Notes: generated by a model from the letters alone, not told the origin. Shown: positions 9,138 through 63,969, counted from the stretch's first letter. The stretch is DNA of 64,000 bases from Macrostomum lignano (GCA_002269645.1 NIVC01000571.1:1-64000); one strand, 5' to 3'. Program-made: numbers and translations.

Positions 9138-9161
9138 TTGGCGACCACGCCAGTTTTCCAC

Positions 9162-10286
9162 ATGTGGAATAACGACGACTACCTGGAACTACGTGGACGT
9201 CTCGTCGAGCGACGGCGCAACGCAGGCGACGAGGCAGCTTCCGTTTCTACAGAGTCTACGAACGCGTCCAACCCCTTCGTGTCGATGTCCACAGTCAGCG
9301 AAGCCACAAATCCCTTCCTCGTTGCCAACGACCTTCAGAGGGCACACCCGGCGGAAGTCTCAACCAACCCGTTCCTTGAAGACATCGACCAAGCGTCAGG
9401 GCAGGCCTCAGCAATTCAGCAGTACGCCTATCCTCCAGCTCATGGATACGCAGCGCTGCCAGACTACAATCCCGGACCGGCTCTTCCGCCAGTACCTAAG
9501 CCTGCACCGTACAACGGTCGGGAGGATTTCGACGACTTTCTCATCAGGATCAGCGCCTATATTAGCCGGTTCCCAGGCATTCGAGACGCCGACAAGATCA
9601 ACACCCTGACTGCGTTCCTCGGACCGGCCTTTGCAACGTACACCACCTGGCTGGCGATCCAGTGTGCCTACGTCGGACTGCCACCGGGGACAACCCTGGA
9701 CCAGCTACCTGGTGTCCGCTATGAGGGCCTCGTTGAACACCTCCGGTCTCGTCACGGCGGGGCCAAGAGTGCAGCGCTACTTCGCCGCGAGTTCCGTGCT
9801 CGGCAGCGTCGACCAGAGGAGAGCTTCGAAACGTACCTGACGGAGCTTCAACGGCTAGCTGCAAGGGCATACCCGGACCCAAGAGCTCAGGCTTACGTCC
9901 AACAGACAGTTAGCGAGCAGTTCATGCATGGTCTCAATGACGGCTACGTCACCGAGCGACTACTGAATCAACCAACACCACCAAGCACGGTGGAGCAGGT
10001 TCTACGAATAGCCCAGCAGCTTCGAGAAACCCGGGCCTACATGGATGCTGGCCGTGGCGAAATCCAGCCCCAGCAACCGAGACCACCACAGAGCCAAATT
10101 TCAGCGCCACCGAAACCACTAATGCCTCAGCAGCCTGCCTCATCTGGCGGTCGAGGACAGCAACGACAGCAATCACCGGCTAGTTCCAACTGTTTCGGCT
10201 GCGGTCAGCCGGGCCACATCCGACGCAATTGCCCAAACGCCGAGGGGGCTGGTTCACGAGGCCAGCACCGGCCCTCTCAGCACTAA
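9162..10286 (+). CDS. gag: Gypsy Gag with CCHC zinc knuckle
   Basis: Open ORF from ATG 9162 just after the PBS, with a capsid-like region and CFGCGQPGHIRRNC. Confidence 0.9.
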   Translation: MWNNDDYLELRGRLVERRRNAGDEAASVSTESTNASNPFVSMSTVSEATNPFLVANDLQRAHPAEVSTNPFLEDIDQASGQASAIQQYAYPPAHGYAALPDYNPGPALPPVPKPAPYNGREDFDDFLIRISAYISRFPGIRDADKINTLTAFLGPAFATYTTWLAIQCAYVGLPPGTTLDQLPGVRYEGLVEHLRSRHGGAKSAALLRREFRARQRRPEESFETYLTELQRLAARAYPDPRAQAYVQQTVSEQFMHGLNDGYVTERLLNQPTPPSTVEQVLRIAQQLRETRAYMDAGRGEIQPQQPRPPQSQISAPPKPLMPQQPASSGGRGQQRQQSPASSNCFGCGQPGHIRRNCPNAEGAGSRGQHRPSQH

Positions 10287-13200
10287 CGCATTCGGCCTCA
10301 ACACCACGCCTCAGCAGCTGCCAGCCTGGCCAGGTGCGCTTCGTCACAGCGCGCATCCTTAGACGACGGCGCCACTGTCTGATCGACACCGGGGCAGAGG
10401 TGTCCTGCATCAGCGATGACATATGTAAGAAAGCTAGGCGGCGGCTGCAGCCCAGCAGCATCATCGTAAGAGGCGTGGATGGCAACCTACAGTCTGTGCT
10501 GGGCGAGACTACTTTGGCAGTGACTCTGGGAACCGTACAAGTCCATCATCGTTTCGTCGTACTCGAGAAGCTTCACCCGACGTCCGTCATCCTGGGCTGT
10601 GACTTCCTCAGTGAACACGACGTCTCGGTCCATCTCCAAGCCGGTTGCATCACTTTCAACAGCCTAGGCGTGTCGATTCCAGCTCGAAAAAGTAAAGAGG
10701 CAGCACAGACCTGCAAGCTCGTATCAGCGGCCTCCGTGCAGCTGCAGCCAGGGGAGCGCTGGATAATCCCCGTTAAACCAGCAAAGTCGGCCTCGTGGAC
10801 GCGATCGGAGTGTCCAGGAGTCGTCACCGGCACAAGATCACAGGGGCTCCTTGTGGGTCGTTGTGTTGCCAAGCTGGTCGAGAGAGGCATGGGCCTAGCA
10901 GTCATCAACGTCGACGACCACACGGTCAACATCAGCGACGGCGACATTGTTGGCATCTTTTCCCCGTTAGGAAGTCAGCCATTCGTTCAGCAATCGGGTG
11001 CCGCTGGCAGCACGGCGGCGACGGCCGCTGGCAGCACGGCGGCGACGGCCGCTGGCAGCACGGCGGCGACGGCCGCTGGCAGCACGGCGGCGACGGCCAC
11101 TGGCAGCACGGCGGCGACGGCCGCTGGCAGCACGGCGGCGACAGCCGCTGGCAGCACGGCGGCGACGGCCGCTGGCAGCACGGCGGCGACGGCCGCTGGC
11201 AGCACGGCGGCGACGGCCGCTGGCAGCACGGCGGCGACGGCCGCTGGCAGCACGGCGGCGACGGCCATTGGCAGCACGATGGCGACGGTCGCGGCAGCAC
11301 GGCTACATCAACAACAGCTTTAGCGACAGAGTTACCTCGCACCGACTGGTTGAACGACGTGCACATCGAAAGCTCCATCTCCGTCGAAGAGCAACAGTCG
11401 GTCAAGGATCTGCTGTTAGAGTTCAGCACCGTTTTTGCATCCCCTGGCAACGCTGGTCGAACTGCAGTCCTGCAGCATCGCATCGACACCGGCGGGGCAA
11501 GGCCGATCCGGCAGGGTTTGCGGCGTGCAGCGCGTCCAGTCATCGACAAGCAGGCCGAATTGATCGACGACATGCTGACCAAGGAGTAATCCGGCCGTCT
11601 TCATCGCCTTGGGCTTCGCCAATCGTGCTTGTTCGTAAGAAGGACGGGACAGCGCGCTTTTGCTTAGACTATCGACTGCTCAATGAGGTCACCAAGCCGG
11701 ACGCTTTTCCAATTCCGAGGATCGACGACACACTCGATGCGCTGCAAGGCAACGCCTACTTTCGGCACTCGATCTGGAAAGTGGCTACTGGCAGGTTGAG
11801 GTCGAGGAGCGCGACAAAGAAAAAACTGCCTTCATCTGCCATCAAGGCCTCTTCGAGTTCAACGTCATGCCGTTTGGTCTGCGCAATGCCCCGGCAACCT
11901 TTCAACGCCTCATGCAGCTGGTGCTCCAAGGCCTGACCTGGCAAGCGTGCCTGGTCTTCATCGACGACGTTATTGTCATGGGCCGGACTATCGAGGAGCA
12001 CAACTATCGGCTGCGGGCGGTGTTCGAGCGGCTGCGGGACGCGAACCTACGTTTGAAGCCATCTAAATGCCATTTCGCCAACACCACGATGATCGTCTTG
12101 GGCCATCGAGTTTCCAAGTCGGGTATCACCGTCGACGAGTCAAAGACTGCTGCGATCCGAGACTGGCCTACACCCCGAACTTCCAAGGAGGTCAAGAGCT
12201 TCCTAGGTCTCGCAGCCTACTATAGACGGTTCATTCGGGATTATTCAAAGATCGCCGAGCCGCTACGACGCCTGACGGTTCCGACAGAAAGGTTTCAGTG
12301 GACGCCCAAGGCCCAAGAAGCATTCGACCAACTGAAGGCAGCACTGACCTCTGCTCCGATTCTCGCCTTCCCGGATACTAGTGCGACCAGCTCGGAGTTC
12401 ATTCTGGACACTGACGCCAGCGACTGCGCCATTGGTGCGGTACTCTCTCAACTGCAGGCGGGCGAAGAACGAGTCATCGCGTACTCCAGCAGAGCACTAA
12501 CGAAAGCCGAGCGCAACTATTGTGTAACGAGGCGGGAGCTGCTGTCCGTCGTTGAGCATGTCAGGAAGTTCCGGAATTACCTGCTGCCTCGGAAGTTCAC
12601 CGTGCGGGTCGATCATCAGTCTCTAACGCACCTGCTGACATTCAAGGAGCCCGAAGGCCAACTCGCGCGGTGGCTGCAGACGCTAGACGAGTTCGACTTC
12701 AGAGTACTCTATCGGCCGGGCCGTCAACACAACAACGCCGATGCGCTGTCCCGTCAGCAGCAGCGCTGTACCAACCAGTGTCGGGTGTGTCGACCAACAA
12801 ATGAGACCACCAGCAGGACGACATCCTCGGTTGCCTGCCAGACCGACGCAAACAGTGATGCCGCCGCTGCCGCCCAGATCAACGCAGCGACCATCAAGCT
12901 AGTGTCGACGGCTACCGACGAAGCTGTTCAGACCGACAATGTGCATGTCTGCGTCAGCACTGTGCCATCAAGGCGCAAGCAAATCCATCAGCCCCGGTCG
13001 GACGACAGCGAAGAAAACAGCAGCAGCGAGGACGACACCAACGAAGATGAATCCGCAGCGCCAGCGGCAGACAACAGGCCACCGACGCTACGTGTGCTTC
13101 AGCTGCAGGATCCGGTTATCAGTCCGGTGTTCCGACTGCTGGCCGACGGCAAGACTAGGTTTACCGACCGACAACGCGACCGAGTACCGCCGGAGAGCCT

Positions 13201-14433
13201 GGTGCTGGCGCAGAAGGTGCATGACTTGTGTTTCGTGAACGGTGCACTGCACAGGCTGGTCAACACAAAGCCAGTACCCGTCATTCCCCGCTGCCGACAA
13301 CGCGAATTTGTCGACGAGATTCACAACGTCGGCCACCTGGGCGAAGTCAAGACGCTGGCCAGCCTGAAGACGCGTTGCTACTGGCCAAAAATGTCGGAGA
13401 GCGTCCGGTTGGCCGTTCGGTCATGCCAGGTTTGCCAGCGGGCAAAGACTCCGGTTATCAAGCGGGCGCCGCTACAGTCCATCACTGCAGGGTTTCCAAT
13501 GCAGCGTGTCGGGTTCGACATTGTCAAGGTCGGCGCTTCCAGAAACGGCAACGATCGGATCCTGAGCATCGTCGACTACTTCAGCAAGTGGACGGAGCTG
13601 GTGCCGATTCCGGACGAGAAGGCGACGACAATTGCCAAGGCCCTCTTCAACAACTGGATCTCCAGGTGGGGTGCTCCGCATATTCTCCACTCCGACCGCG
13701 GCAAGAGCATCGATGGCCGCATTATTCGCAGTCTCTGTACACTATTGGGGGTCGACAAGACTCGGACGTCGGGTTATCATCCTCAATGTGACGGCCTCGT
13801 GGAGAGATTTCATCGGACACTCCATCAGATGTTGCGCTGCCACCTTCAAACTGTCGATCCGCTGGACTGGGAGGACGCCCTGCCGTACTGTCTCCTAGCC
13901 TATCGAAGCAGCATCAGCGCGACGACCGGATTTTCCCCACATTTCCTGATGACGGGCCGGGAGGTGGTTCTGCCATTGGACGTTGTCTATCGGTCCCCAG
14001 AGCCTCCATCCGTCGTCGGCCAGTACGCAGTAGAGACCATTCAACGACTGCAGGACGCCTTTGACACTGTGCGGAGGTCAACTGGCGCGGCTCAACGACG
14101 GCAGAAGCGGTACTACAATCTGAAAGCCCAGAAGCGCAAGTTTCGCACCGGCGACCTCGTGTGGCTGTTCGTTCCGCCTGCGTGCTGTCCAGGACCAACT
14201 GTCTGCCTCCGAAGCATCAATCACCGTGGACAGGCCCATTTAAAGTCATGCGCAAGACATCACCTGTCAACTACTTGGTGCGGCCGATCAATTACACGGA
14301 CGGGGAGATCAAAGGGCGCGTCGTGCATGTCAACAAGTTGAAGCGAGCGTGTCTGCAACGGACCCAGTCTGCTCAACGCTCTGATCAGGACGCCAGTGAC
14401 GATGAAGGGCAACTTGTTGACGCTGAGGACTGA
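10229..14433 (+). pseudogene. pol: Gypsy Pol (protease, RT, RNase H, integrase with GPY/F tail), interrupted by four single-base frameshifts as assembled (~11292, ~11585, ~11761, ~14180)
   Basis: LIDTGAEVS (PR); SPWASPIVLVRKKDG..RFCLDYRLLN, MPFGLRNAPATFQR, FIDDVIV (RT); LDTDASDCAIGAVL, NYCVTRRELL (RH); H..GHLG..C..C, VGFDIV, HSDRG, GLVERFHRTL (IN); WTGPFKV (GPY/F). Confidence 0.93.
11000..11303 (+). repeat. 24-bp in-frame minisatellite (GSTAATAA x ~12.5) in the PR-RT spacer of pol
   Basis: GGCAGCACGGCGGCGACGGCCGCT repeated. Confidence 0.95.
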
Positions 14434-15033: not shown

Positions 15034-16905
15034 CTTATTAAATTTAAAATATATCAGTATATTCTAATAAAAATATCTTTGCCTATCAAGCAATTTCTTC
15101 ATATACGGATACGTGATAACCAACAAACAAACGTTATATTTTTGTAAAGGACCTAAAGTAAAAAAGTAAACTTATCTAGAATTCGTTGAAAAAGCATCTG
15201 TGCTCATACCGTTAGCTTAGGTGTCTAAAATACTATCTCGATAGTTACATTATGTAGCTGCCATAACAGAATTAGACAGTAGATAAGTAGATAAGTAAAT
15301 AAAAACCAGGCAACTGAGCTATTTTGAAGTCATCGAGCTTTTTCTTGCAAATTTGCAATCTTACTGAGATGCTGACACCCATAGATTCAGTTATACAGTA
15401 GTATGCCGCATTAGATTCAGTTGCAAATAACCTGGAAAAACAGCAAGTTGCAAGTAGGTACATGTATTTCAGTAAAAGTATAGCATTTTGACTTAAGCAG
15501 CCGCATAAATTAACCCACTCTGAAAAAAGTACGAGTAAATGTTCATGTAAACAACATTAATTCTGCAATTCCTTCATCTTTAACTGCATAGAAGCCAGGT
15601 CAGGTGTATTTCTGGTAGCCAATGGCAGTCAACAAAGGATAGGATTTCCGCTCTAAAACACAGCACTGACACAAATGCAGCCGCTGGATTCTGACAACAA
15701 AAGCAAAAATAGAAATAGCAGCCAGACAAAATGAAACCAAAACGCTGTCTCTTGAAATTCAAAACAGATACGAAAAAGCACACCCAAATAGACCGCAATT
15801 CTAGCTAAAATGTAATCAAATCTAAATATACTAATCCTATACTAAATACGAGTAAAACCACACAAACCTTATTTAGATAGATTGTTCATCTTCCGATTAC
15901 ACTGAATTATTGAAATGCGCTTTAGACATTACCCGGAAAGCGCTTGCATTGGGAAACTGATTAAAAGACACTGATTGCAAAGACGGCAGGATTTAGTTGG
16001 CAATGAGCAGTAAAATAAGCTGAGCCGGGCAAGTGCGCACTCTCACAAAATAACAGCAGACTGAACACGAAAGCTTTCCTAGATGGACATTCAATACACC
16101 AGCTAATGTCAAAGCCGAAGCAACCCATTACGTTTTAAAGGAGTTTTGCCTGGAGAGGAAACACTGGGAGGAGGCAGCGCACCGGCTGCACTGTCGATTC
16201 GCGCTAAAACTCTGAGTAAATCTTAAGACATCGGCGCACAAATGGCATCATGAAGGCCAGCTGGAATGACACTGGGCGCAGGTAGCTACTCATAGTAAGT
16301 AGGTAACAGTGATACTCGCATAAGCCAACATCATGTGTGGCCAGAGTGGGCAGTCGCACAAAGCAGCACAAGAAAAAACAGCATGCGTACATAGACATCA
16401 GTGTAAGCAGGTTTAGACAGTTAAAATACATCTGAGAAACAGTCAACCGCATATTTGTGAAACAAACTACAACAGCAACAGCTAAAACAAAAAAATCTGA
16501 TCTGATAAAATTCACGAGTGAACACGCGGCAAAGACAGAAACGAGACAGCCGACAGCTGAGCAGAGCATACTGTTTACCTGCTTCATTATAACAGAATAG
16601 TTATAAATCTCGCTTACCTGAACTGGACAGGACAGGTAGGCACACCCGCGCATCCATCCCAATTCAAGCAATCACAGGCCAGCTTCATCAACTGTTAATC
16701 ACAGCTGCAAAATGCAGAATCATAGTTTTTCATTTGCCACCTGCCCTGTCTAGTAGGAACAAAGTAAGCTGGGTGGAGGGATAAAATATTTTTTCAAGAT
16801 TTTTAGGCTTAAAAAGCTTCAACTGTCAACAAAGCGCAAAAATTATTCATTCGTCACTGCACTACTCAACTCCTCCGATTGAGTCGGGTCGAAAAACTGC
16901 GCGCC

Positions 16906-19900
16906 TCACCCCCTGGCCGGCTGCTGCAGCCGGTAGACGAAGGCGGCGAACGCCAGCGTTAGCAGAAACACCAGCACGGAGGTCAGGCTGGGCAGCAGGC
17001 CGCCCAGGCTGCGCGGCTCCGAGGCTGCAGCGGCATCGCCGGCTGCGAGGGCGGCGCCGCGGCCCGGCAGGCCGTACAGCGGGCGCATGCAGGAGCGCAG
17101 GCTGGCGTACAGGTCGGGGAACTGGCACTCCTGCTCGGCCAGTAGCTGCTTGACCCGGAACCGCTCGGTCGGTGTCCGGAAGCAGGCCGGACAGTTGTCC
17201 GGAATGACGGGCAGACCGGCCAGGTCGGCGAACTCTCTGGTGCTGCTCTCGCGGACGTACACGAAGGGCCGGATGACGCGAAGGTCGCCCGTCTCCACGG
17301 TGTAATTGGCTTTCATCGTGCGCAGGCAGCCGTTGTGGAAGGCGGACATCAGGAAGCTCTCGGCCAGGTCGTCCAGGTGCTGCCCCATCGCCAGCACGTT
17401 GTAGCCGTGGCGCCTGGCCGTGGCGTACAGGCGGCCGCGCTTCATGCGGGCGCAGTAGGCGCAGATGGAGTCGCAGTCCACCCTGCAGTTGTGGGGGTCG
17501 CCAAGAATGATCAGTTAAGCCTGTGGGGACTCTGGGGTGCTCTAAAAACTCTGTTGATCTGAGGAGTCTGGGGTGCTCTGAGGACTCTGGGGTGCTCTGA
17601 GGAGTCTGGGGTGATCTGAGGACTCTGGGGTGCTCTGAGGACTCTGGGGTGCTCTGAGGACTCTGGGGTGCTCTGAGGAGTCTGGGGTGCTCTGAGGACT
17701 CTGGGGTGCTCTGAGGAGTCTGGGGTGATCTGAGGACTCTGGGGTGCTCTGAGGACTCTGGGGTGCTCTGAGGAGTCTGGGGTGATCTGAGGACTCTGGG
17801 GTGCTCTGAGGACTCTGGGGTGCTCTGAGGAGTCTGGGGTGATCTGAGGACTCTGGGGTGCTCTGAGGACTCTGGGGTGCTCTGAGGACTCTGGGGTGCT
17901 CTGAGGAGTCTGGGGTGCTCTGAGGACTCTGGGGTGCTCTGAGGAGTCTGGGGTGATCTGAGGACTCTGGGGTGCTCTGAGGACTCTGGGGTGCTCTGAG
18001 GACTCTGTGGTGATCTGAGAAGTCTGGGGTGCTCTGAGGACTCTGGGGTGCTCTGAGGACTCTGTGGTGATCTGAGAAGTCTCGGGTGCTCTGAGGACTC
18101 TGGGGTGCTCTGAGGACTCTGTGGTGATCTGAGAAGTCTGGGGTGCTCTGAGGACTCTGGGGTGCTCTGAGGACTCTGTGGTGATCTGAGAAGTCTGGGT
18201 GCTCTGAGGACTCTGGGGTGCTCTGAGGACTCTGTGGTGATCTGAGAAGTCTGGGGTGCTCTGAGGACTCTGGGGTGCTCTGAGGACTCTGTGGTGATCT
18301 GAGAAGTCTGGGTGCTCTGAGGAATCTCCAGGGTGCTCTGAGGACTCTGGGGTGCTCTGAGGACTCTGTGGTGATCTGAGAAGTCTGGGGTGCTCTGAGG
18401 ACTCTGGGGTGAACTGAGAAGTCTGGGGTGCTCTGAGGACTCTGGGGTGCTCTGAGGACTCTGTGGTGAAATGAGAAGTCTGGGGTGCTTTGAGGACTCT
18501 GGGGTGCTCTGAGGACTCTGGGGTGCTCTGAGGACTCTGTGGTGATCTGAGAAGTGTCGGGTGCTCTGAGGACTCTGGGGTGCTCTGAGGACTCTGGGGT
18601 GCTCTGAGGACTCTGTGGTGATCTGAGAAGTCTGGGTGCTCTGAGGACTCTCCAGGGTGCTCTGAGGACTCTGGGGTGCTCTGAGGACTCTGTGGTGCTC
18701 TGAGGACTCTGTGGTGATCTGAGAAGTCTGGGGTGCTCTGAGGACTCTGGGGTGATCTGAGAAGTCTGGGGTGCTCTGAGGACTCTGGGGTGCTCTGAGA
18801 AGTCTGGGTGCTCTGAGGACTCTGTGGTGATCTGAGAAGTCTGGGGTGCTCTGAGGACTCTGCAGGGTGCTCTGAGGACTCTGGGGTGCTCTGAGGACTC
18901 TGTGGTGAACTGAGAAGTCTGGGGTGCTCTGAGGACTCTGGGGTGCTCTGAGGACTCTGGGGTGCTCTGAGGACTCTGTGGTGATCTGAGAAGTCTGGGG
19001 TGCTCTGAGGACTCTGCAGGGTGCTCTGAGGACTCTGGGGTGCTCTGAGGACTCTGTGGTGAACTGAGAAGTCTGGGGTGCTCTGAGGACTCTGGGGTGC
19101 TCTGAGGACTCTGTGGTGATCTGAGAAGTCTCGGGTGCTCTGAGGACTCTGGGGTGCTCTGAGGACTCTGGGGTGCTCTGAGGTGAGGAGTCTGGGGTAA
19201 TCTGAGGACCTGGGATGCTCTGAGGACTCTGTGATGCGCATTACACCTTCGCACCGATTTCAACTGCAGCTAGTTGAAATTTACAGGTGATCTAATGGGT
19301 GAGCTAATGGGTGAGCTACACATGTAATAAACAAAAACACGATAGAAAATTCGAGCCGAACTCACTTAGCCGCCTCCTCCATGATGCACTGCCGCTCAAA
19401 GTAGTAGGTAACGCCCAGGCGCTCCAGGTAGCCAATCAGAGGCGAGGGGTCGTACGAGTTGCTGACGGGGTCCACGGTGCACGCGGCCAGCTGGAAGCGC
19501 GGACCCGAAGTCCGGTCAGCGTAGGCCTGGAACTGATGCAGCGCGTGCAGCAGGCTGAGCGAGTCCTTGCCGCCCGACAGGCAGATGAGCACCCGGTCGC
19601 CGTCCCGGATCATCTCGAACTCCTCCATGGCCTCCAGGAAAGGCCGGAAGATATTGCGGGGCGGCGAGCGCCACAGCGTGCCCGGCTTGCAGAATTTCTT
19701 GCGGCGCTTCTCCAACAGCTGCTGCTGGCTCAGCTGTGGCTTCTGCTTTTTCTGCTGTTGCGTCTGCTTCTCCGGTGACCGCGGCTGTTGGCGCCGGTTG
19801 CGGAGGCCGCAGGCGGGGGCGGAGGCGGCGGTGGAGGCGGCGGCAGAGGACGGCGGAGGCAGAGGAGGCGTCGGCGGCGGCAGCTCGGAGTCGGCTGCGG

Positions 19901-22900
19901 CGGGGAAGACGGGCAGGAGGCGGCCGGGCTGCACCGGACAGGCGGCAGCGGTGGCGTCCACCGCGGGTTGCTGAGGGGCGTCGCCGGCCAAAGCATTCTC
20001 GGCCTCGCAGGGCAGGAGGAACCAGCGCAGGCGGCCGGACTCCTCGTCGAACATCTGCGTGGCGTCCGGGTGGCGCCGGCTGCCCCGATGCGACAGCGAG
20101 CGGCGCACCAGCTCGTCGGCCTCGGCCATCAGCTGGGCAAAGTCCAGCGACCTGCGGCAGCGGCCGTGGGGAGGGCGGAAACAGGTGTTGTGCAAAATTT
20201 AAAATAACACCTAAAATTATTAACAATCTGAATTTTCAGAGGATCGGGGCGGTCTTGCTTTAATGCTGCCGATTATAATATCCGGTGGCCTTGCGTTTCT
20301 TCATTAAGACGCAATATATGACGTGGGATGCAGCGTTTCCCCTATTATTACACCAAACTAGCAGCGCTACTAAATCTGTTAAAAACTGCTGCGACAAAGA
20401 CCTGGATGAAGACTGCCGCCGCCGCTGCCGGCCTCCTCCGGCGCCGCCAGACGCAGAGGCCGGGTAGGTCATCTGGCCGCTGGCGTAGGAGACGCGGCTC
20501 AGCCACAGGCGCTCAGGGAACGGGTCGTGTCCGATGGCCCGCCACTCGGCCGTCTCCGGGTTCACCTTGTACAGCGGCAGCAGCTTCCAGCCGTGCTCGC
20601 CGACCCAGCGCAGGCAGCGGAGAACAAAGACGGCCTCCTGGTCGGGCATGAAGAACGGCAGGTTGATGCGGACAAAGCCGGGCCGCAGCAGCTCCCTGTG
20701 CGGGTAGTCAAAATACTTGCTGCGCACGAACTGCCCCATGCCGCTGCGCCCAACCAGAGCCGCCTCCAGGCGGGCTGCCACCGGCTCGCTGATTCCCAGC
20801 AAGTCCATCGCGTACGGCCCGGCGCAGGCGCAGCCGCTGCGTGCCTGGATGCCGAACAGGTCGTTCAGCAGCGTGGCCACGAACTGCGGGCGGGGATGGC
20901 CCCTTGGGGTGAGTCCGAGGCCTGTGTGGCATGGATGCAGCACTGAGTGAGTCTGTGTGGCATGGATGCAGCACTGAGTGAGTCTGTGTGGCATGGATGC
21001 AGCACTGAGTGAGTCTGTGTGGCATGGATGCAGCACTGAGTGAGTCTGTGGCATGGATGCAGCACTGAGTGAGTCTGTGTGGCATGGATGCAGCACTGAG
21101 TGAGTCTGTGTGGCATGGATGCAGCACTGAGTGAGTCTGTGGCATGGATGCAGCACTGAGTGAGTCTGTGGCATGGATGCAGCACTGAGTGAGTCTGTGT
21201 GGCATGGATGCAGCACTGAGTGAGTCTGTGTGGCATGGATGCAGCACTGAGTGAGTCTGTGTGGCATGGATGCAGCACTGAGTGAGTCTGTGGCATGGAT
21301 GCAGCACTGAGTGAGTCTGTGTGGCATGGATGCAGCACTGAGTGAGTCTGTGTGGCATGGATGCAGCACTGAGTGAGTCTGTGTGGCATGGATGCAGCAC
21401 TGAGTGAGTCTGTGTGGCATGGATGCAGCACTGAGTGAGTCTGTGTGGCATGGATGCAGCACTGAGTCGGTGGCAAGGATGCAGCACTGAGTGAGTCTGT
21501 GTGGCATGGATGCAGCACTGAGTGAGTCTGTGTGGCATGGATGCAGCACTGAGTGAGTCTGTGTGGCATGGATGCAGCACTGAGTGAGTCTGTGTGGCAT
21601 GGATGCAGCACTGAGTGAGTCTGTGGCATGGATGCAGCACTGAGTGAGTCTGTGTGGCATGGATGCAGCACTGAGTGAGTCCTAATTCACAACAAATCCT
21701 AAAAAAGCAGCACTGATTTGCAAAATCCGTCAAAATCATCGCTAAGAAAATTTGAAAGAAAAATTTTTAGATCAAAGGAAAAATTGAAGCAAAGCAGCAG
21801 CCAGCAGGCGCTGGGAACAAGGCTAGCATGGGGTGTCGAATATCTCAGCAGCTGCTCCCAGCCCAATGCCCTAATTACCATATGATGGAGCAGCAGGCCC
21901 GAGGCCGGATGCCGCACCACGAAGCTGAACAGCGGCAGGCGCTGCAGCTCGCGCCCGCCCAGCACAGAGATGCCCTCGGCGCCGTGCAGCTCACGCCAGG
22001 TCAGGTCGCACAGATGGCGCTCCCGCTTGGCCAGCAGGTCCTGGCCGACCGTCCGCTTCAGCTGCAGCACCAGGCCGGCCCGGATGCTCTCCACGATAGC
22101 CGGCGTGCCGCCCTCCTCCCGGTGCTCCGCCTCGTCCAGGAAGATTCGGCGCTCCCGGCGCACGAAGAAGACGGTGCCGCCGCCCACGCCGTCTGGCACG
22201 GGGCTGCTGAGGAGCGCCCGCTTCACGATCAGCACGCCGGGGGTCTGCACTCCGCCAACGAACTTGTGGCAGGAGAAGTACACGGCGTCCTTGTAGGACA
22301 GGCCGGCGTCTTCCACGGGGTTCATGTCGATGGGCACGTAGGGCGCCGCGGCAGCGTAGTCGAAGAAGGCGAGGGCGCCGTGGCGGTGCAGCAAGCAGGC
22401 GAGACGCACCGTGTCGCTCAGCACGCCGGTGATGTTGGAGGCCGCGGCGAAGCAGCCGATGACGCGACGGTCGGGGTTGGCGCCGGGCTCAGCCGCAGCC
22501 TCCTTGAGCAGCCGCTCCAGCTGGTCCAGGTTCACCGCCCCCTCGGGAGTGGGCTCGATGCGAATCACCTCGGCAGCCACCTCCTGCCACGGCAGCAGGT
22601 TCGAGTGGTGCTCGTAGGGCCCGACGAATACCAGCTGGGGGTGACGGAGGGATCGGCAGAGTTAGCAGTAGCAACCAGGGTCCAGTCTGGAAACCAGCTG
22701 TCCTGAATATTGCAATCAGCTGTCCTGAATATCCCAACAAGCTGTCCTGAATATCCCAACCAGCTGTCCTGAATATTCCAACCAGCTGTCCTGAATATTC
22801 CAACCAGCTGTCCTGAATATTCCAACCAGCTGTCCTGAATATTCCTACCAGCTGTCCTGAATATTCCTACCAGCTGTCCTGAATATTCCAACCAGCTGTC

Positions 22901-24004
22901 CTGAATATTCCAACCAGCTGTCCTGAATATTCCAACCAGCTGTCCTGAATATTCCAACCAGCTGTCCTGAATATTCCAACCAGCTGTCCTGAATATTCCA
23001 ACCAGCTGTCCTGAATATTCCTACCAGATGTCCTGAATATTCCTACCAGCTGTCCTGAATATTCCTACCAGCTGTCCTGAATATTCCTACCAGATGTCCT
23101 GAATATTCCTACCAGCTGTCCTGAATATTCCTACCAGCTGTCCTGAATATTCCTACCAGCTGTCCTGAATATTTTATCTTCAGTCCAAAGGACCTCAGCA
23201 CTACAATTAACTTTATATTTAGAACTCACCGGAGGCACCTTGAGCTGCAGGTTGTGGATGAGCTTGTGCACAGCGCCGGTGCAGCCGCTCCCAGTGAAGA
23301 TGACGGCGTCCAGGTCGCTGGCCCGGCAGCAGTTCCTCACAATGTCCCTGGCCTCGTCCCGGAACATGGTGGTCTGCAGCGAGGTGACCCCTGTGGTGGT
23401 GTGCGTGTTGCCGTAGTGGGTCAGCACCTCATCGCGGATGTAGTCCTCGATGAAGCTGAGAGCCCTGCCGGAGGCTGTGTAGTCGCAGTAAACCAGGTGC
23501 CGCTGACCGAACGGCCCATTGAAAGGCATGTAGGAGCCGATGACGGACCTGCGTGGGGTTTTTTTAATGGTGAATCCCGGTGGTAAATTGAAGTTGCTGG
23601 GTTCGATTTCTCGTGTAGTCAAATTAAATCTGGCGTTTACTTTTAAGATTTACAAGTCATGAGGGCATGCTATACACTCTATGAGTCATGAGTGCCATGA
23701 GTATAAATCTATGGGTATATGGGAACAAACATATCTACTTGCCTCCTTGACTGGCTATGGGTCAGCTGTCTCCAGAAGCCCCAATGTGACTAACCAAACC
23801 TAAACAGGAAAATATGCTGTAAAACAAGTAAAGAATCTATGCAACAAACCTATTGATGTAGTCTAGCAGAGCATGCCCAGCTGGTTCCTCATTCTCTGCT
23901 GGCTGCTGGCTGTCCTGTCTTGGGATTTCATAGAATTTCCGAGGCTGGTGCTCTGTCTTGGCTGGAGAATCTGGTGCCACCTGCTGCTGCTGTTCTTGGC
24001 TCAT
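16906..24004 (-). CDS. Cysteine desulfurase (aminotransferase class V)-TtcA-like tRNA 2-thiolase fusion with C-terminal TM helix, join(24004-23850, 23548-23230, 22634-21879, 20883-20402, 20151-19366, 17482-16906), ~1024 aa
   Basis: All five introns are GT-AG with matching phases (2,0,0,2,2) and the CDS totals 3075 nt. Desulfurase: YCDYTASG, VIFTGSGCT, EHHSNLLPW, FDYAAAAP, SCHKF (PLP Lys), EGGTP, RSGCACAG (persulfide Cys). TtcA: CLSGGKDS (PP-loop), CAYCARMKRG, GQHLDD, VIRPF, NCPAC. Tail: LLPSLTSVLVFLLTLAFAAFVY. Confidence 0.9.
17520..19235. repeat. Intronic minisatellite, ~18-bp unit (CTCTGGGGTGCTCTGAGGA and variants), ~1.7 kb
   Basis: Direct reading. It fills most of the last intron of the fusion gene and produces the spurious 576/573-aa ORFs. 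Confidence 0.97.
20922..21681. repeat. Intronic minisatellite, 31-bp unit (CACTGAGTGAGTCTGTGTGGCATGGATGCAG) with 29-bp variants
   Basis: Direct reading. Confidence 0.97.
22695..23172. repeat. Intronic minisatellite, 22-bp unit (CAACCAGCTGTCCTGAATATTC)
   Basis: Direct reading. Confidence 0.97.
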
Positions 24005-25450
24005 TGCAATAAAAAACAAGCTTTAGGACATGAATTAAAATAGTAATCCAATCCATTAACTTTGTCTATAATTAAGTACAAATATATAAATTATAAAAAA
24101 TTATAAGTTCATTTTACACTTAACAAACTGACAATTCTAGTGCTCAACAAAGTTTAAAATGCTAAGACTAGCCTAAGCCCAATATACTATCTCTAAGTAA
24201 TAATTACTTAGACATAGGCATATAATGACCTCAGTTTAGGTTAGTATTTAAATTGAAACTTTAGAAGATTAACTTTGATGACTTTGAGAACAATCATAAA
24301 ACATGAAACTAGCCAAATAAGACCTACAAAAATAATTTCTCTATGGCTATAGTCTATATCATGCAATATATACACATTATTTATATATATATAATAAATA
24401 GAAATATTAAAGCACTCATATGTGATATTGATTATATGTTTCTAACTTATAGTCAGTTGAAGAGTTTTAATTTATATATATCTAAAGGGTTATTGACCAT
24501 ATTGCAATAGATAAAAATAAATAGACAAACAAGTAGCCTAGATTTGTTACCATATATCTATGCTAATAAGCCAATATATTGCTACAACTAATCAATAATA
24601 CATTGCTTGCTAGTTTCCAAAAAATATTTTATTTAACTTATGTGGTATTGTACCCTAAATTTTTTTATTAAAGGATATAAAAAACATAAAAATTATTTAT
24701 AAAGCAAAATTATTTATAGGCAGGCTTATTCATAGGTAGGCTTTATACCTAGCTCACCTAGGCCCCTGATAATAAGAGATATCATTGTCAACATTTGTTT
24801 ACTTTTGTATATATTGATTGAAGTGAAACGAAGGCACCGTTAGCAAGAGGATGTAAGAAATCAGCCGACACGCGCATGATGCGTGAACAAGCATCCAGCC
24901 TTGGCAGCAACTCCCCAGATGCACAAGATCTACATGCCTAAAAATAGTCTTGATGATCGGCAAGCAAGAAGCCTAGCCATGCGACCCTCGCGTGATGCAT
25001 GCACAACCTCTGACCAACACTGCCTATTGGGCCTCGAAATCCCACTCTCTCTCCCTACTGCTCCTATTCCTCGTTGCTCGCGTACAATCTGTTAACTTAT
25101 AAAATATACTGATTGAAGAGGAAAGATCCTTGCCTGAAGTTTGAGAATGTGACTCTAGAGATCACAAAGAGAAAGTTACCATCAGGTCCATTGTTCATTG
25201 TCTTCCTGAACTGTTGGCAGAAGGAAACGATAATATGGGAAAAACCCATATAAATTGTCGTTTCAATATTGTATATCTACCTATCTATCTATTTTATTGA
25301 ATGATTGACAAAATAAATGCAGGGCTGTCCCGGAGGGGACACAGCGGGAAGGTGCAGGCACCCATTCTGCTAGATTGACAAAATAAGAATTCAGCTATTA
25401 TTAGTAGCCCATATAAAAACATAGTGTCATTGATGTTAAATACTTTTTAG

Positions 25451-30222: not shown

Positions 30223-33200
30223 ATGATTTCTGAGGCGTCCGCTCAGCGCTTTGCTGAGCTGGAGCTCGAGTGCAGCTCGGCAGGCAGTCTGTTTGCCAAC
30301 CTGGTGTGCGACATGAAGACTGGCATTCCCCTCTATGAGGAGCTCATCAACAAGGCTCAGAAGCTTAATGGCGCTTTCAAGTAAGCTCAGTTGGGACTCA
30401 ATGCTGCTCACATAATTCCAGAATCAACAGCGGGGGATAGCGAGTCATTTCCCCTGTTCCTATTGCCAAGTGGGGGGCATTTCAGGTCACGAAATTCTCC
30501 TAACAGCAGTTGAGACGGTTAGCTTGCTGGGGGGGGGGCATTGCTGCAAACCCCACAGCCAGCGAGGGGGCCAGCATCCGCGCTCATTCCGCTGGCCCCT
30601 GAGCATACATGCGCAACAGTCGGCCGATCCGGCCGACCGATTTGGCGGCCAACCAAGGAAGTCGCAAAAATGCCCACCCAAAAAAATCCAAGTAGTAGTA
30701 CTAATTAGCTGACGAGGCATTTTGACTAAATAAGACTCATAGTTACTCTTGCCGTTTACCCAAAGTTGCGTTAATTTTGCTTAATGGTTTTCTTACATGT
30801 AAGTCGCATTTTTGGCCCAAAACTACGTCGCATTTTGTTAAAACTAAGTCGCATGGCCGACCGAATTTTGGAGGTTGCGCATGTATGCCCTTGAGCGCTT
30901 ACACAGGGTGTAATTGAGATTTTGGGTAATTCACTGGCATAGCAACGGCAGTTGTTTACTTTAGATACGGAGCTAGTGACTGAATTCTATTAATGAATTC
31001 TGAGCAACTCCTCACCATTGCAGGGTGCTGCTAACGGCGAGCTCGGCATTCCTGGACTCGTTTCAAAAGATTGCGGACCTGGCTTCCAGCACCCATGGTA
31101 AGCCCTGGCGCTCTTATCTCTGATCCCCAGGCCTTGGCCTGCCTCGCAGCTGCTGCGCTGGGCATTACGTAATAATTCCATCCCTGCCGAATCCCCTCTC
31201 TCCCTGGAAGTCCCAAATCGCCCTCTCTGTCACCTGGGCTGCGGTGTGTTTTCCATGGTTCACAGCATTTCCCGCGTCTCGGGCATTAATTGTTCCTCTG
31301 CAATGCATGTTTTTATTGCTAAAAAGCCATTTTTTCTGCTGCTTTTTGGCCTGTTTCCAGCCCGTGTTATGTAAGAGCGCATGGGCGATGCCTGCGCGCC
31401 TCCATTGCCGAAATGGCCGCTCCATGGCTACTCGCCAAACTCGCCATTGGCGCTCCTTTCTTGAGGGCCATAAAAAGACTTTTTCGCATTTGTTTACGAG
31501 TTTTTTTCTGAGACCTTTTTTCCACAATGCATGCAGTGAGCAGTGCTCTACGCGCTGTGGACTTCAGTGTTTGTAAACTCAGAGAGACCCAGCTAGCGAG
31601 AAAGGAGAGTGGAGAGCTGCTGCTGCTGCTGCTGCTGCAGAATAGCAGGAGGGAGAGGCGGCTGTGAGAGCTGCGCTGGCAGTGCCGAGGCCGGGGTCAA
31701 GTCCGCTGGGTGACCCGCTCTCGCCCAGCTGCTGCGCTATGGGGGGGGGGGGGCAGACCCTGTGGCCTTTTTGTCAAAGCCGTCTCCGAATTTTCTCTCC
31801 GCTGTTTGACAGTTCATTTTCGGTGGGGGGGGGGTCCGCCCGATATAGGAAAGCTGCAGTTTGCAAAGATGGGCAATTTCTCCCCTATTCGCTTTCAATT
31901 CATTCGCCCCGATGCCTGGGGAGGGTGCATTGCGAACTGGCACTCGGCACAGCCGCCTTGTACCCGCTATGAACTCGGTTGTGCTGCAGATTTGTATGGC
32001 GCCGCGCATTTAAAGCAACTTTCTTCAAGTTGTCAGCATTTTAATTATTGTGTTAGCGTAGCCAGTACAGGCTGGGTGCCATACAGCACTCTTTTCTGCC
32101 TTCATACTGTATTTGTCTGTAAATTAGAGTTGCTTAACTGAGTGGTCTAGCGCGTTTACCGCAGGTTAAGCTGAGTTGGCCGTGGTTAGTACGCAGCTAG
32201 GGCTGTAGGCACTGGCGCAACGCCTTCGTCGACATGACTGTAATGACTCAGGAGTCAGGCAGTGTTTGTGGCGTGCGAGAAAAAGCCTTAACCCTCCAAG
32301 TAGGGTGAGACGATATTTATATTTGGAAGCGATCTGGAATTTGGCGCTATTGTCCTTGCCGCTGAGCGTGCAGAACACCTCGTTGACTGGCTGGTCTGCA
32401 AGCTGGTCTTGCTCGGGCTGTAGCGCGTTGATCTTCGAGCGGCTGAGGCAGGCCTTGGCCAGGTGGTTGAACTTGCCGCAGTTGGTGCACCGCTTGCCTT
32501 GCGCCCTGTTGCAGCTCCTGTGGCCCGACTCGCCGCATCGGATGCACTTCGCGGATGGCTGCGGCTGGCGCGACAGTTCCGGCGGCGGGTAGCGCTGGCG
32601 GCGCACCTGCGCTACTTCCTCAGAGGCTGCCGCTGTCCTGGACATGATGGCCGCCTGCTTTTCTGCTGCCTCGTGCGTCCTGGCCAGTTGGAGGGTGTCC
32701 GCCAGGTTGATGTTGGGGATGTTCAGCAGCCGCTTCCTCAGCGACTCGCTGCGGCAGCTGGCCACAATTTGGTCCCTGACGAGCGAATAACGTAGGCTCT
32801 CGAACTGGCAGGCTTCCGAGGCGCTCCAGAGTCTGCTGTGCCAGGCGTCTATCGACTCGCCTTCGTCCTGCACGCACTGGCGGAATTGGTAGCGGAGAAA
32901 CACAATGTTGTCGCGACCTTGGAAATGCTTGGTGAACAGAGCGATCAGCTGGTCGACCGTGGGTTCGACTGTAGGTTCGCCTTCTGTTGTGTCGGTCTCT
33001 GTTGTTATGATCTCGCTATACAGGTCGCTTACTTCTTTGCCTGCCGTGTATAGGAGGATCTGGCGTTTCTGTGTCTCGTTTGTGATGCCCGTGGCCGCCA
33101 GGTAGCGTAGAAGGTTGGATGACCACTCCTGCCAGCGCTTGCTTGTGGAGTGGGGGTCGTCTCTAATGCTAAAGTTACCTGGGGCCGGCAGTTGTAGGAA

Positions 33201-52403: not shown

Positions 52404-63969
<11,566 letters not shown>

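What the first reader, a model, noticed from the sequence alone, without database searches (positions are those of the whole stretch)
16906..24004. Intron-containing animal gene fusing a cysteine desulfurase to a bacterial-type TtcA tRNA thiolase
Seen: six phase-consistent exons give one ~1024-aa ORF. It has a complete PLP class-V desulfurase (SCHKF lysine, RSGCACAG cysteine), a linker, and a PP-loop domain (SGGKDS, CAYC, GQHLDD, IRPF, CPAC) colinear with E. coli TtcA. It lacks the N-terminal Zn-finger CXXC pairs of TtuA/Ncs6/CTU1. Established: in bacteria TtcA is an Fe-S enzyme making 2-thiocytidine (s2C32) in tRNA, with sulfur supplied by the separate desulfurase IscS. s2C32 is regarded as prokaryotic, while eukaryotic s2U34 uses NFS1-URM1-CTU1/2 or MTU1. 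Inference: this is a self-contained sulfur-mobilising RNA thiolation enzyme, implying an unrecognised thio-modification (s2C or another target) in an animal. I recall similar uncharacterised architectures among invertebrate predicted proteins but cannot verify this here.
Basis: partly seen in the sequence, partly recalled or inferred. Interest (0 to 1): 0.92.

Follow-up and report, generated by a model that had tools for sequence, protein, structure and literature searches.

The report
Fused cysteine desulfurase–TtcA tRNA thiolase gene
This flatworm gene really does join a sulfur-releasing enzyme to a bacterial-type tRNA-thiolating enzyme in one protein; the same fusion occurs widely in invertebrates and some protists and is the likely maker of 2-thiocytidine, a tRNA mark first reported in an animal only in a September 2026 preprint.

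Summary
Six GT-AG exons on the minus strand (24004 to 16906) give a 1024-aa ORF identical to GenBank PAA80656.1 of Macrostomum lignano. The N half is a SufS-like (type II) PLP cysteine desulfurase: PLP lysine K282, catalytic C430, and a SufS fold at TM 0.85-0.88. The C half is a PP-loop domain of the TtcA clade with SGGKDS, CAYC and CPAC and no Zn fingers. It is 54-60% identical to short TtcA proteins of betaproteobacteria and 31% to E. coli TtcA. It lies apart from TtuA/NcsA and TilS. The fusion is not animal-specific. It occurs in most invertebrate phyla, in Apicomplexa and in a stramenopile. A bioRxiv preprint of 28 Sep 2026 reports s2C32 in Aplysia tRNA-Lys(UUU) and names the orthologous fused gene as the candidate, without genetic or enzymatic proof. 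This is a new member of a just-described, still untested kind. New here: the catalytic cysteine, the separate bacterial affinities of the two domains, the wider eukaryotic spread, and a hydrophobic C-terminal tail unique to M. lignano.

The parts
23850..24004 (-). Exon 1 (ATG at 24004-24002; aa 1-52, phase-2 end). It encodes the eukaryote-specific N-terminal stretch with the conserved RKFY motif.
23230..23548 (-). Exon 2 (aa 52-158): start of the SufS-like PLP domain (YCDYTASGR, YGNTHTTT).
21879..22634 (-). Exon 3 (aa 159-410): core of the PLP domain, including EHHSN (22599-22613) and the PLP-lysine motif SCHKF (22260-22274, K282).
20402..20883 (-). Exon 4 (aa 411-571): catalytic-cysteine motif RSGCACAG (20818-20841, C430 aligns with the SufS/CsdA catalytic Cys), plus the family-specific C-terminal extension (RPGFVR, WKLLP).
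19366..20151 (-). Exon 5 (aa 571-833). It holds a conserved helical module with LRWFLLPCEA (19989-20141, confident in AF2), a disordered Pro/Ala/Gln-rich linker (19731-19919), and the first half of the PP-loop domain with SGGKDS (19560-19577).
16906..17482 (-). Exon 6 (aa 833-1024 plus TGA at 16906-16908). It holds CAYC (17452-17463), GQHLDD, IRPF, CPAC (17182-17193) and a hydrophobic C-terminal helix (16933-16998).
22692..23173 (-). Intron 2 minisatellite, 22 bp x 22 copies.
20922..21681 (-). Intron 3 minisatellite, 31 bp x 25 copies.
17527..19231 (-). Intron 5 minisatellite, 19 bp x 89 copies. This intron splits the PP-loop domain itself.

Best explanation
This is one nuclear, intron-containing gene of the flatworm Macrostomum lignano. 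It encodes a two-enzyme fusion. The N-terminal module (aa ~46-545) is a type II (SufS/CsdA-like) PLP-dependent cysteine desulfurase. It belongs to a distinct family that also exists as stand-alone proteins in bacteria. Inferred mechanism: PLP on K282 binds L-cysteine and C430 takes the sulfur as a persulfide. A conserved helical module (aa ~575-625) and a disordered linker tether this module to a C-terminal PP-loop domain (aa ~738-965) of the TtcA clade. By analogy with E. coli TtcA, that domain holds a [4Fe-4S] cluster on three cysteines (C840, C843 and C930 or C933). It adenylates C2 of cytidine 32 of a tRNA with ATP at SGGKDS. It then replaces the activated oxygen with sulfur delivered from the persulfide through the free iron site, giving 2-thiocytidine (s2C32). 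The likely substrates are cytosolic tRNAs such as tRNA-Lys(UUU). In effect the fusion supplies the thiolase with its own sulfur donor, where bacteria use the separate IscS. Shown here: the gene structure, the domain identities, the conserved catalytic residues, the clade placement, the wide distribution and the purifying selection. Inferred: desulfurase activity, Fe-S binding, direct intramolecular sulfur transfer, the s2C32 product, the tRNA targets and the cytosolic location.
For: Gene model and identity to the deposited annotation. Two copies with 9 synonymous and 1 non-synonymous differences. Domains. N module: it aligns with solved SufS structures (8d8s E 2.6e-30), with EHHSN/EHHAN, SCHK/SGHK and RSGCAC-A/RAGHHC-A in register. 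The AF2 model (pLDDT 80.5) matches SufS structures at TM 0.85-0.88 for all top 50 hits. C module: the TtcA profile is best in 25/25 orthologues. The plasmid tblastn ranking is TtcA far above TilS. It is 54-60% identical to bacterial short TtcA proteins from real bacterial genomes. CXXC and the C-terminal Cys motif align with the E. coli cysteines, three of which (the CXXC pair and the second Cys of CNLC) are essential for s2C32 and the [4Fe-4S] cluster (PMC4081106). K, both Cys of GCxCAGP, SGGKDS, CxxC and NCPxC are invariant or nearly so across 64 sequences from sponges to protists. Single mRNA: a 3161-nt Logan transcript contig carries an uninterrupted 964-aa two-domain ORF. The preprint reports even RNA-seq coverage across the Aplysia gene. 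Product: s2C32 was mapped by LC-MS/MS in Aplysia tRNA-Lys(UUU), and this fused gene is the TtcA homologue that a blastp with E. coli TtcA retrieved in that genome.
Against: No activity, cofactor or product has been measured for any member of the fused family, and none in M. lignano. The PP-loop domain scores 175-177 bits against the NCBIfam TtcA equivalog model, below its 272-bit cut-off. It is only ~31% identical to the one characterised TtcA type, and its closest bacterial relatives (224-231 bits) are themselves uncharacterised. The N module falls far below the SufS and CsdA cut-offs (120 bits against 475), and its bacterial relatives have no known function or conserved gene neighbourhood. 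Type II desulfurases normally need a dedicated acceptor (SufE, SufU or CsdE), and none is evident here. Domain docking could not be examined because no coordinates or PAE were returned. The trees are NJ on ~238 columns, not ML.
Confidence: 0.62

Rival explanations
1. The PP-loop domain belongs to a TtcA-related subfamily (the 'NCPACF type' shared with betaproteobacteria) that thiolates something other than C32 of tRNA. That could be another position, base or RNA class, or a small molecule. The fusion would then be a self-sufficient sulfur-insertion enzyme with a different product.
For: It falls below the curated TtcA equivalog cut-off. It has only ~31% identity to E. coli TtcA. No member of this subfamily has been characterised, in bacteria or eukaryotes. 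The link to Aplysia s2C32 is by homology only.
Against: TtcA is by far the best profile (about 120 bits above TilS). The clade is sister to E. coli-type TtcA (80%). All cluster-ligand and PP-loop residues are colinear. s2C32 exists in an animal in which this fused gene is the TtcA homologue retrieved by blastp with E. coli TtcA.
Confidence: 0.17
2. The N module is not the sulfur donor for the C module. It might be a selenocysteine lyase, a cysteine sulfinate desulfinase or another PLP enzyme, or it might serve only to build or repair the Fe-S cluster. Sulfur for thiolation would then come from the usual NFS1-dependent route.
For: It scores below all curated desulfurase cut-offs. Weak hits to selenocysteine lyase SclA and to CsdA (annotated as cysteine sulfinate desulfinase in E. 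coli) also appear. Stand-alone TtcA-like proteins of this clade exist in protists and bacteria without it.
Against: The catalytic Cys, PLP Lys and His are strictly conserved. The fusion persists across Metazoa, Alveolata and Stramenopila, which argues for functional coupling. The fold is SufS.
Confidence: 0.13
3. The locus is two adjacent genes (a desulfurase and a TtcA) wrongly joined, or the protein is cleaved in the linker into two polypeptides.
For: Older M. lignano models split it into a 469-aa protein that runs into intron 3 and a 404-aa protein. The linker is ~60 aa, disordered and poorly conserved. The preprint raises cleavage as a possibility.
Against: The exon 4/5 junction is phase-consistent with canonical sites. 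The deposited gene model agrees with it. The conserved, confidently folded helical module next to the junction occurs only in fused proteins. More than 120 orthologues are fused. An uninterrupted two-domain transcript contig exists. Cleavage after translation cannot be excluded.
Confidence: 0.06
4. The sequence is bacterial contamination, or a very recent horizontal transfer with no function in the animal.
For: Both domains have unusually close bacterial relatives: 44-49% identity for the N domain and 54-60% for the C domain.
Against: The gene has five spliceosomal introns. It has animal neighbours (a retroelement and a Kv channel) on a 533-kb contig. Two copies are under purifying selection. 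Orthologues occur in flukes and all major invertebrate phyla, and animals are monophyletic in the tree at 99.5%.
Confidence: 0.01

Closest known systems
Aplysia californica 'IscS-TtcA' fused gene LOC101861551 (bioRxiv 10.64898/2026.09.27.754811, 28 Sep 2026)
   Same: Same two-domain architecture (CsdA-like plus TtcA-like) and the same conserved motifs: PLP Lys, GCxCAGP, SGGKDS, CxFC and CPAC. Molluscan orthologues are ~50% identical to the M. lignano protein over its full length. It is the proposed maker of s2C32 in cytosolic tRNA.
   Different: The preprint looked only at molluscs, aligned the N domain to IscS and so could not find its catalytic cysteine. Here the N domain is SufS-type with C430 as catalytic Cys. 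The M. lignano protein is shorter (1024 against 1177 aa). It lacks the linker Cys that the preprint flagged (Aplysia C588). It ends in a hydrophobic helix instead of an acidic tail.
E. coli / Salmonella TtcA (tRNA-cytidine(32) 2-sulfurtransferase; Bouvier et al. 2014, PMC4081106)
   Same: PP-loop SGGKDS, a central CXXC, a C-terminal Cys motif, no Zn fingers, and colinearity over profile positions 24-248 of 295. The presumed chemistry is the same: a [4Fe-4S] cluster on three Cys and ATP-dependent s2C32 formation.
   Different: Identity is only ~31% and the score is below the equivalog cut-off. The C-terminal motif is NCPAC instead of PCNLC. It is fused to its own desulfurase, whereas E. coli uses separate IscS and IscU.
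Short TtcA proteins of betaproteobacteria (e.g. Parasulfuritortus cantonensis, Thiobacillaceae MAGs; 238-290 aa)
   Same: They are 54-60% identical to the M. lignano PP-loop domain. They carry the same FCAYCSRMRRG and NCPACF motifs and sit in the same clade at 91.5% bootstrap.
   Different: They are stand-alone bacterial proteins in a housekeeping context (cutA-dsbD-thioredoxin-like-ttcA) with no adjacent desulfurase. They are functionally uncharacterised.
SufS / CsdA type II cysteine desulfurases
   Same: Same fold (TM 0.85-0.88). EHH(S/A)N, S-x-HK and R-x-G-x-x-C-A-x-P motifs are in register, and the catalytic loop is short.
   Different: Identity is ~25%. There is a ~30-aa insertion after the catalytic Cys and a ~70-aa C-terminal extension, and a second invariant Cys two residues upstream (GCxC). 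It forms a separate clade (98.5%) with ~480-500-aa bacterial proteins, mostly from Actinomycetota. No SufE, SufU or CsdE partner is evident.
CTU1/Ncs6/NcsA/TtuA (group II 2-thiolases) with the NFS1-URM1 sulfur relay
   Same: Same PP-loop superfamily, with three-Cys [4Fe-4S] site equivalents.
   Different: There are no N- or C-terminal Zn-finger CXXC pairs. Identity is ~20%, the clade is separate, and no ubiquitin-like sulfur carrier is implied.

Membership tests
TtcA clade (group I PP-loop tRNA 2-thiolases) | [quoted passage not shown] | tested here: met
   aa 763-768, invariant in 64 sequences
TtcA clade (group I PP-loop tRNA 2-thiolases) | Central CXXC aligned with E. coli C122/C125 (Fe-S ligands) | tested here: met
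   C840/C843 align with E. coli C122/C125; their essentiality is shown in PMC4081106
TtcA clade (group I PP-loop tRNA 2-thiolases) | C-terminal Cys motif supplying the third ligand (E. coli CNLC) | tested here: met
   CPAC at C930/C933 aligns with CNLC (RefSeq C210/C213, which the paper numbers C219/C222)
TtcA clade (group I PP-loop tRNA 2-thiolases) | Absence of the extra Zn-finger CXXC pairs of group II (TtuA/Ncs6/CTU1) | tested here: met
   No CXXC pair before SGGKDS or after CPAC
TtcA clade (group I PP-loop tRNA 2-thiolases) | Groups with TtcA rather than TtuA/NcsA/TilS in a phylogeny | tested here: met
   NJ trees: (eukaryote + short bacterial TtcA) 91.5%; with E. coli-type TtcA 80%; TtuA/NcsA form a separate clade (93%)
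TtcA equivalog (NCBIfam NF007972, E. coli type) | Score at or above the curated cut-off of 272 bits | tested here: not met
   175-177 bits; short bacterial relatives score 224-231 and E. coli scores 514. I therefore file it as a TtcA-clade subfamily, not as an E. coli-type equivalog.
TtcA clade (group I PP-loop tRNA 2-thiolases) | [4Fe-4S]- and ATP-dependent formation of s2C32 | not testable with these tools
   Only indirect support: s2C32 in Aplysia
Type II (SufS/CsdA-like) cysteine desulfurase | Fold-type I PLP enzyme with Schiff-base Lys in S-x-H-K | tested here: met
   Aminotran_5 E 1.5e-39; K282 aligns with the SufS PLP Lys; fold TM 0.85-0.88
Type II (SufS/CsdA-like) cysteine desulfurase | Catalytic Cys on a short loop, R-x-G-x-x-C-A-x-P | tested here: met
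   RSGCACAGP aligns with RTGHHCAMP (SufS) and RAGQHCAQP (CsdA); the IscS loop is longer
Type II (SufS/CsdA-like) cysteine desulfurase | Membership of SufS or CsdA proper (curated cut-offs) | tested here: not met
   120-122 bits against 475 (SufS subfamily) and 66-68 against 494 (CsdA). It forms a separate clade with bacterial ~480-aa proteins.
Type II (SufS/CsdA-like) cysteine desulfurase | Cysteine desulfurase activity and a persulfide acceptor | not testable with these tools
   No assay was possible. No SufE/SufU-like segment was recognised by Pfam.
Type I desulfurase (IscS/NFS1) | Best match to IscS/NifS models, long flexible SSGSAC(T/S)S loop | tested here: not met
   IscS models hit only 2-3 of 25 orthologues, and weakly. 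Identity to E. coli IscS is 22%, and the loop motif is absent.
TtuA/Ncs6/CTU1 group II thiolases | Zn-finger CXXC pairs; best profile TtuA/NcsA | tested here: not met
   30-37 bits against cut-offs of 450-500, and no Zn fingers
Eukaryotic fused desulfurase-TtcA family (Aplysia LOC101861551 type) | Aminotran_5 + ATP_bind_3 in one polypeptide with conserved GCxCAGP, LRWFLLPSEA, SGGKDS and NCPACF | tested here: met
   ~50% full-length identity to more than 100 fused proteins including molluscs

The most novel reading that the evidence does not exclude
The fused protein is an old, widely retained eukaryotic system found in Metazoa, Apicomplexa and Stramenopila. It was not found among the matches examined from vertebrates, fungi, plants or nematodes. 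It mobilises sulfur from cysteine outside the mitochondrial NFS1 route and feeds it directly into a bacterial-type TtcA to make s2C32 in cytosolic tRNAs. The two halves have different bacterial affinities: an Actinomycetota-like desulfurase family of unknown function and a betaproteobacteria-like short TtcA. In M. lignano the enzyme has in addition acquired a tail anchor that would tether tRNA thiolation to a membrane.
Probability: 0.4. Interest if true: 0.8.

Novelty: new member of a known kind. Interest (0 to 1): 0.6.

Why it matters
s2C32 was regarded as a prokaryotic tRNA mark until a preprint of September 2026. If this gene makes it, a large share of animal and protist diversity carries an anticodon-loop modification, and a dedicated NFS1-independent cysteine desulfurase, that the classic model organisms seem to lack. 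That would explain why it was missed. M. lignano is genetically tractable (RNAi and transgenesis are established there, from my own knowledge). It could therefore provide the missing causal test linking the fused gene to s2C32. The presence of the fusion in Apicomplexa (Besnoitia, a gregarine) also raises the question of whether parasites use it. The N module belongs to a widespread bacterial family of unknown function, for which this fusion offers a functional clue: a sulfur donor.

Tried and rejected
1. I looked for a bacterial operon precursor of the fusion. None of the 80 best bacterial loci encoding the N-module family has a TtcA-like gene within 8 kb, and their neighbours are not conserved. 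The short bacterial TtcA genes have no desulfurase next door.

2. I asked whether the hydrophobic C-terminal helix is a family feature. It is not. Only M. lignano among 120 homologues has one.

3. I asked whether family members carry the CIA-targeting C-terminal tripeptide [LIM]-[DES]-[WF] (PMC10245660). Only 3 of 119 match strictly and 20 match a relaxed form, and M. lignano does not match. It is not a defining feature.

4. A phmmer search of 50% representatives with the PP-loop domain listed 150 hits, all at 49% identity or more, without names. It did not by itself separate eukaryotic from bacterial members. That was resolved by a further search from a stand-alone member.

5. There are no tRNA genes in the window to inspect for C32.

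6. The gene identifier Mlig012232 is not in the searchable literature. A search for TtcA in Apicomplexa returned only primer-sequence matches.

7. The sigma-70 promoter and terminator scan is irrelevant for a eukaryotic gene.

8. No solved TtcA structure exists in the PDB copy; the closest are NcsA and TtuA.

9. One bacterial sequence (L025) in the N-domain tree was probably taken in the wrong frame and should be ignored.


Full report
**Observation**

The gene lies on the minus strand. I read 16700-24300 in reverse complement and joined six exons: 24004-23850, 23548-23230, 22634-21879, 20883-20402, 20151-19366 and 17482-16906. This gives a 3075-nt CDS of 1024 codons plus TGA. All five introns have GT...AG boundaries and consistent phases. 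GC is 68% and GC3 is 88%.

The translation is identical to GenBank PAA80656.1 ('hypothetical protein BOX15_Mlig012232g2, partial', Macrostomum lignano) after the two leading residues of that record. The window maps to contig NIVC01000571.1 of assembly GCA_002269645.1. Older models in UniProt split the locus. One is a 469-aa protein that reads into intron 3 and another is a 404-aa protein.

A second genomic copy (g1, contig NIVC01001215.1) has the same six exons at 99.4-100% nucleotide identity. Ten codons differ, of which nine are synonymous. The single amino-acid change (P599S) lies in the linker. That pattern indicates purifying selection on the whole fused frame.

**Domains**

Pfam finds Aminotran_5 (aa 71-438, E 1.5e-39) and ATP_bind_3 (758-929, E 1.8e-12) and nothing else.

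Among NCBIfam models, the N half is best matched by the SufS subfamily (120-122 bits, far below its 475-bit cut-off). The C half is best matched by TtcA NF007972 (175-177 bits against a cut-off of 272). The other PP-loop models score much lower: TilS_N 55-57, TtuA 34-37 and NcsA 30-33. The same ranking holds for all 25 diverse orthologues scanned. IscS models hit only 2-3 of the 25.

**N module**

Against solved structures the best sequence matches are SufS proteins (8d8s, E 2.6e-30). EHHSN aligns with EHHAN, FSCHKF with FSGHKM, and RSGCACAGP with RAGHHCAQP.

An alignment with E. coli SufS, CsdA and IscS taken from MG1655 confirms that C430 sits at the position of the SufS/CsdA catalytic cysteine, on the short loop typical of type II enzymes. 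IscS has the longer SSGSACTSASLEP loop.

An AlphaFold2 model built on 64 sequences has mean pLDDT 80.5 and pTM 0.65. All 50 top Foldseek PDB matches are SufS-type desulfurases, with target-normalised TM of 0.81-0.88, mostly 0.85-0.88.

The module is nevertheless not SufS or CsdA proper. It is ~25% identical to them. It carries an insertion after the catalytic Cys and a C-terminal extension. It forms a 98.5%-supported clade with stand-alone ~480-500-aa bacterial proteins. The best 80 tblastn loci are 43-49% identical over 480-498 residues and come mostly from Actinomycetota.

Those bacterial genes have no TtcA-like gene within 8 kb and no conserved neighbourhood.

The 2026 preprint aligned this domain to IscS and reported that it could not find the catalytic cysteine. 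The SufS-type alignment resolves that.

**C module**

A tblastn of the domain against 72,556 plasmid records returns annotated ttcA genes at 1e-33 to 1e-29 (30-37% identity). TilS appears only at 8e-6.

I built NJ trees (Kimura distance, ~238 columns, 200-300 bootstraps). They used real sequences of E. coli TtcA, ten other bacterial TtcA-family proteins, B. subtilis TilS, and the cores of NcsA and two TtuA proteins copied from PDB alignments. The eukaryotic sequences form a clade (97%) sister to E. coli-type TtcA (81%). TtuA/NcsA lie apart (93%).

A search started from a stand-alone metagenomic member (P0152) then uncovered a large group of short (238-290 aa) bacterial TtcA proteins. These include Parasulfuritortus cantonensis and Thiobacillaceae MAGs, on contigs up to 3.4 Mb, in a cutA-dsbD-thioredoxin-like-ttcA context.

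These short proteins are 54-60% identical to the M. lignano domain. That is nearly as close as other animals are (60-68%), whereas E. coli TtcA is 31% identical. In the enlarged tree the eukaryotic and short bacterial sequences form one clade (91.5%). Animals are monophyletic (99.5%). The whole clade joins E. coli-type TtcA at 80%.

SGGKDS, C840/C843 (CAYC) and C930/C933 (CPAC) align with the E. coli PP-loop, with C122/C125, and with the CNLC motif. Bouvier et al. showed that the CXXC pair and the second Cys of CNLC are essential for s2C32 and for the [4Fe-4S] cluster (PMC4081106). Their C219/C222 correspond to C210/C213 in the RefSeq protein.

There are no Zn-finger CXXC pairs. I therefore place the domain in the TtcA clade, in a distinct 'NCPACF' subfamily. 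I do not call it an E. coli-type equivalog, because it falls below that curated cut-off.

**Between the domains and at the ends**

A block of ~50 aa (575-625, ending in LRWFLLPCEA) is conserved in all fused proteins. It is predicted as confident helices and is absent from the bacterial relatives. It is followed by ~60 disordered residues.

The first ~40 residues carry a conserved RKFY motif that the bacterial proteins lack.

Most orthologues end 55-80 aa after NCPACF, and 83 of 119 have an acidic tail. Only M. lignano ends in a hydrophobic helix (aa 995-1016, Kyte-Doolittle 2.18), which looks like a tail anchor. The strict CIA-client tripeptide is rare, at 3 of 119 (motif from PMC10245660).

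**Distribution**

All of the best 120 full-length matches have both domains. The named ones come from sponges, cnidarians, echinoderms, hemichordates, amphioxus, brachiopods, nemerteans, annelids, molluscs, flatworms, tardigrades, chelicerates, crustaceans and hemimetabolous insects. They are annotated 'uncharacterized' or automatically as TtcA.

Sampling of more distant clusters adds beetles (Diorhabda), the apicomplexans Besnoitia besnoiti and Ancora sagittata, and the stramenopile Cafeteria roenbergensis. Besnoitia and Cafeteria were confirmed by Pfam to have both domains. Ancora has both the GCACAGP and SGGKDS motifs at 1137 aa.

Stand-alone eukaryote-like versions also exist. No vertebrate, nematode, fungus or plant appeared among the named hits, but this was not an exhaustive test. 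From my own knowledge, human, fly, worm and yeast lack this architecture.

A 3161-nt Logan contig (SRR19411529) carries an uninterrupted 964-aa two-domain ORF, which shows a single mRNA in another species.

**Literature**

The only paper found that addresses the fusion is bioRxiv 10.64898/2026.09.27.754811 (28 Sep 2026). It maps s2C32 in Aplysia tRNA-Lys(UUU) and states that this is the first detection in a eukaryote. It identifies the 1177-aa 'IscS-TtcA' gene LOC101861551 and finds it fused in 28 mollusc species. It notes even RNA-seq coverage across the gene. It offers no genetic or enzymatic test.

**Mechanism and verdict**

The best-supported reading is a self-contained thiolase. PLP on K282 and C430 strip sulfur from cysteine as a persulfide. 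The TtcA-type domain, with a three-Cys [4Fe-4S] cluster, adenylates C32 and inserts that sulfur. Gene structure, domain identity, residue conservation, clade placement and selection are shown here. Activity, cofactors, intramolecular transfer, product, targets and location are inferred.

The main rival is that this TtcA subfamily has a different substrate. A second rival is that the N module is not the direct donor. Mis-joined genes and contamination are effectively excluded.

Novelty is reduced by the preprint. Even so, the case remains experimentally open, and M. lignano is a good organism in which to test it.

**Context**

The window also holds a Ty3/gypsy-like retroelement (9138-14341, + strand) and exons of a Kv-type potassium channel (52404-53822, 62683-63969). 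There are no tRNA genes.

Noticed in passing
window 22692-23173, 20922-21681, 17527-19231: Three of the five introns are almost entirely minisatellite arrays: 22 bp x 22, 31 bp x 25 and 19 bp x 89. The 19-bp unit occurs nowhere else in the window. The second gene copy has the same exons but shorter arrays. Its introns 2, 3 and 5 are 397, 794 and 947 nt, against 595, 995 and 1883 here. Introns 1 and 4 are the same length to within one base (300 vs 301 nt; 250 nt in both).
   Followed up: partly
window 16933-16998 (aa 995-1016): A hydrophobic C-terminal helix (LLPSLTSVLVFLLTLAFAAFVY, Kyte-Doolittle 2.18) looks like a tail anchor. It is present only in the M. lignano protein among 120 homologues, which mostly end in acidic tails.
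   Followed up: partly
window 9138-14341 (+): Ty3/gypsy-like LTR retroelement ORFs lie ~2.5 kb beyond the 3' end of the gene: gag with zinc knuckle, aspartyl protease, and RT-RNaseH-integrase.
   Followed up: partly
window 52404-53822 and 62683-63969 (+): Exons of a voltage-gated potassium channel: a BTB_2/T1 domain (E 1.4e-28) and an Ion_trans domain (E 9.5e-55).
   Followed up: no
window 32166-33206 (-): A 346-aa ORF with a weak zinc-knuckle hit, possibly another gag remnant.
   Followed up: no
window 21699-21878 (read-through of intron 3): The older UniProt model A0A1I8IH39 (469 aa) reads from exon 3 straight into intron 3 and ends there. This splits the gene artificially. The companion model A0A1I8G9J5 (404 aa) starts in the linker.
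   Followed up: yes
L083 5014-5949 (E. coli ttcA): The cysteine numbering in Bouvier et al. 2014 (C46, C200, C219, C222) does not match the RefSeq MG1655 protein (C45, C191, C210, C213). C122 and C125 agree. Care is needed when transferring residue numbers.
   Followed up: yes
L096-L100, gene at 8001-8789: The short betaproteobacterial TtcA genes sit directly downstream of cutA-dsbD, and in four of the five loci (L096, L098-L100) also of a thioredoxin/AhpC-like gene. This hints at a link to thiol-redox housekeeping.
   Followed up: no
P0270 (Ancora sagittata), P0195 (Besnoitia besnoiti): In the gregarine sequence the PLP lysine position reads SPHT instead of SPHK. Besnoitia has GGCLCASP instead of GCxCAGP. 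The desulfurase half may be degenerating in some apicomplexans, or the gene models may be imperfect.
   Followed up: no
aa 20-27 of the protein (window ~23925-23948): A short RKFY(x)(I/L)P motif near the N-terminus is conserved from sponges to flatworms. It is absent from the bacterial relatives, and its role is unknown.
   Followed up: no
L002-L081: In 14 of 80 bacterial loci a MOSC-domain-like ORF lies about 1.4 kb downstream of the stand-alone desulfurase-like gene. This assignment rests on my reading of the sequence, not on a profile search. The pairing recalls the NifS-like plus MOSC architecture of eukaryotic molybdenum cofactor sulfurase.
   Followed up: no
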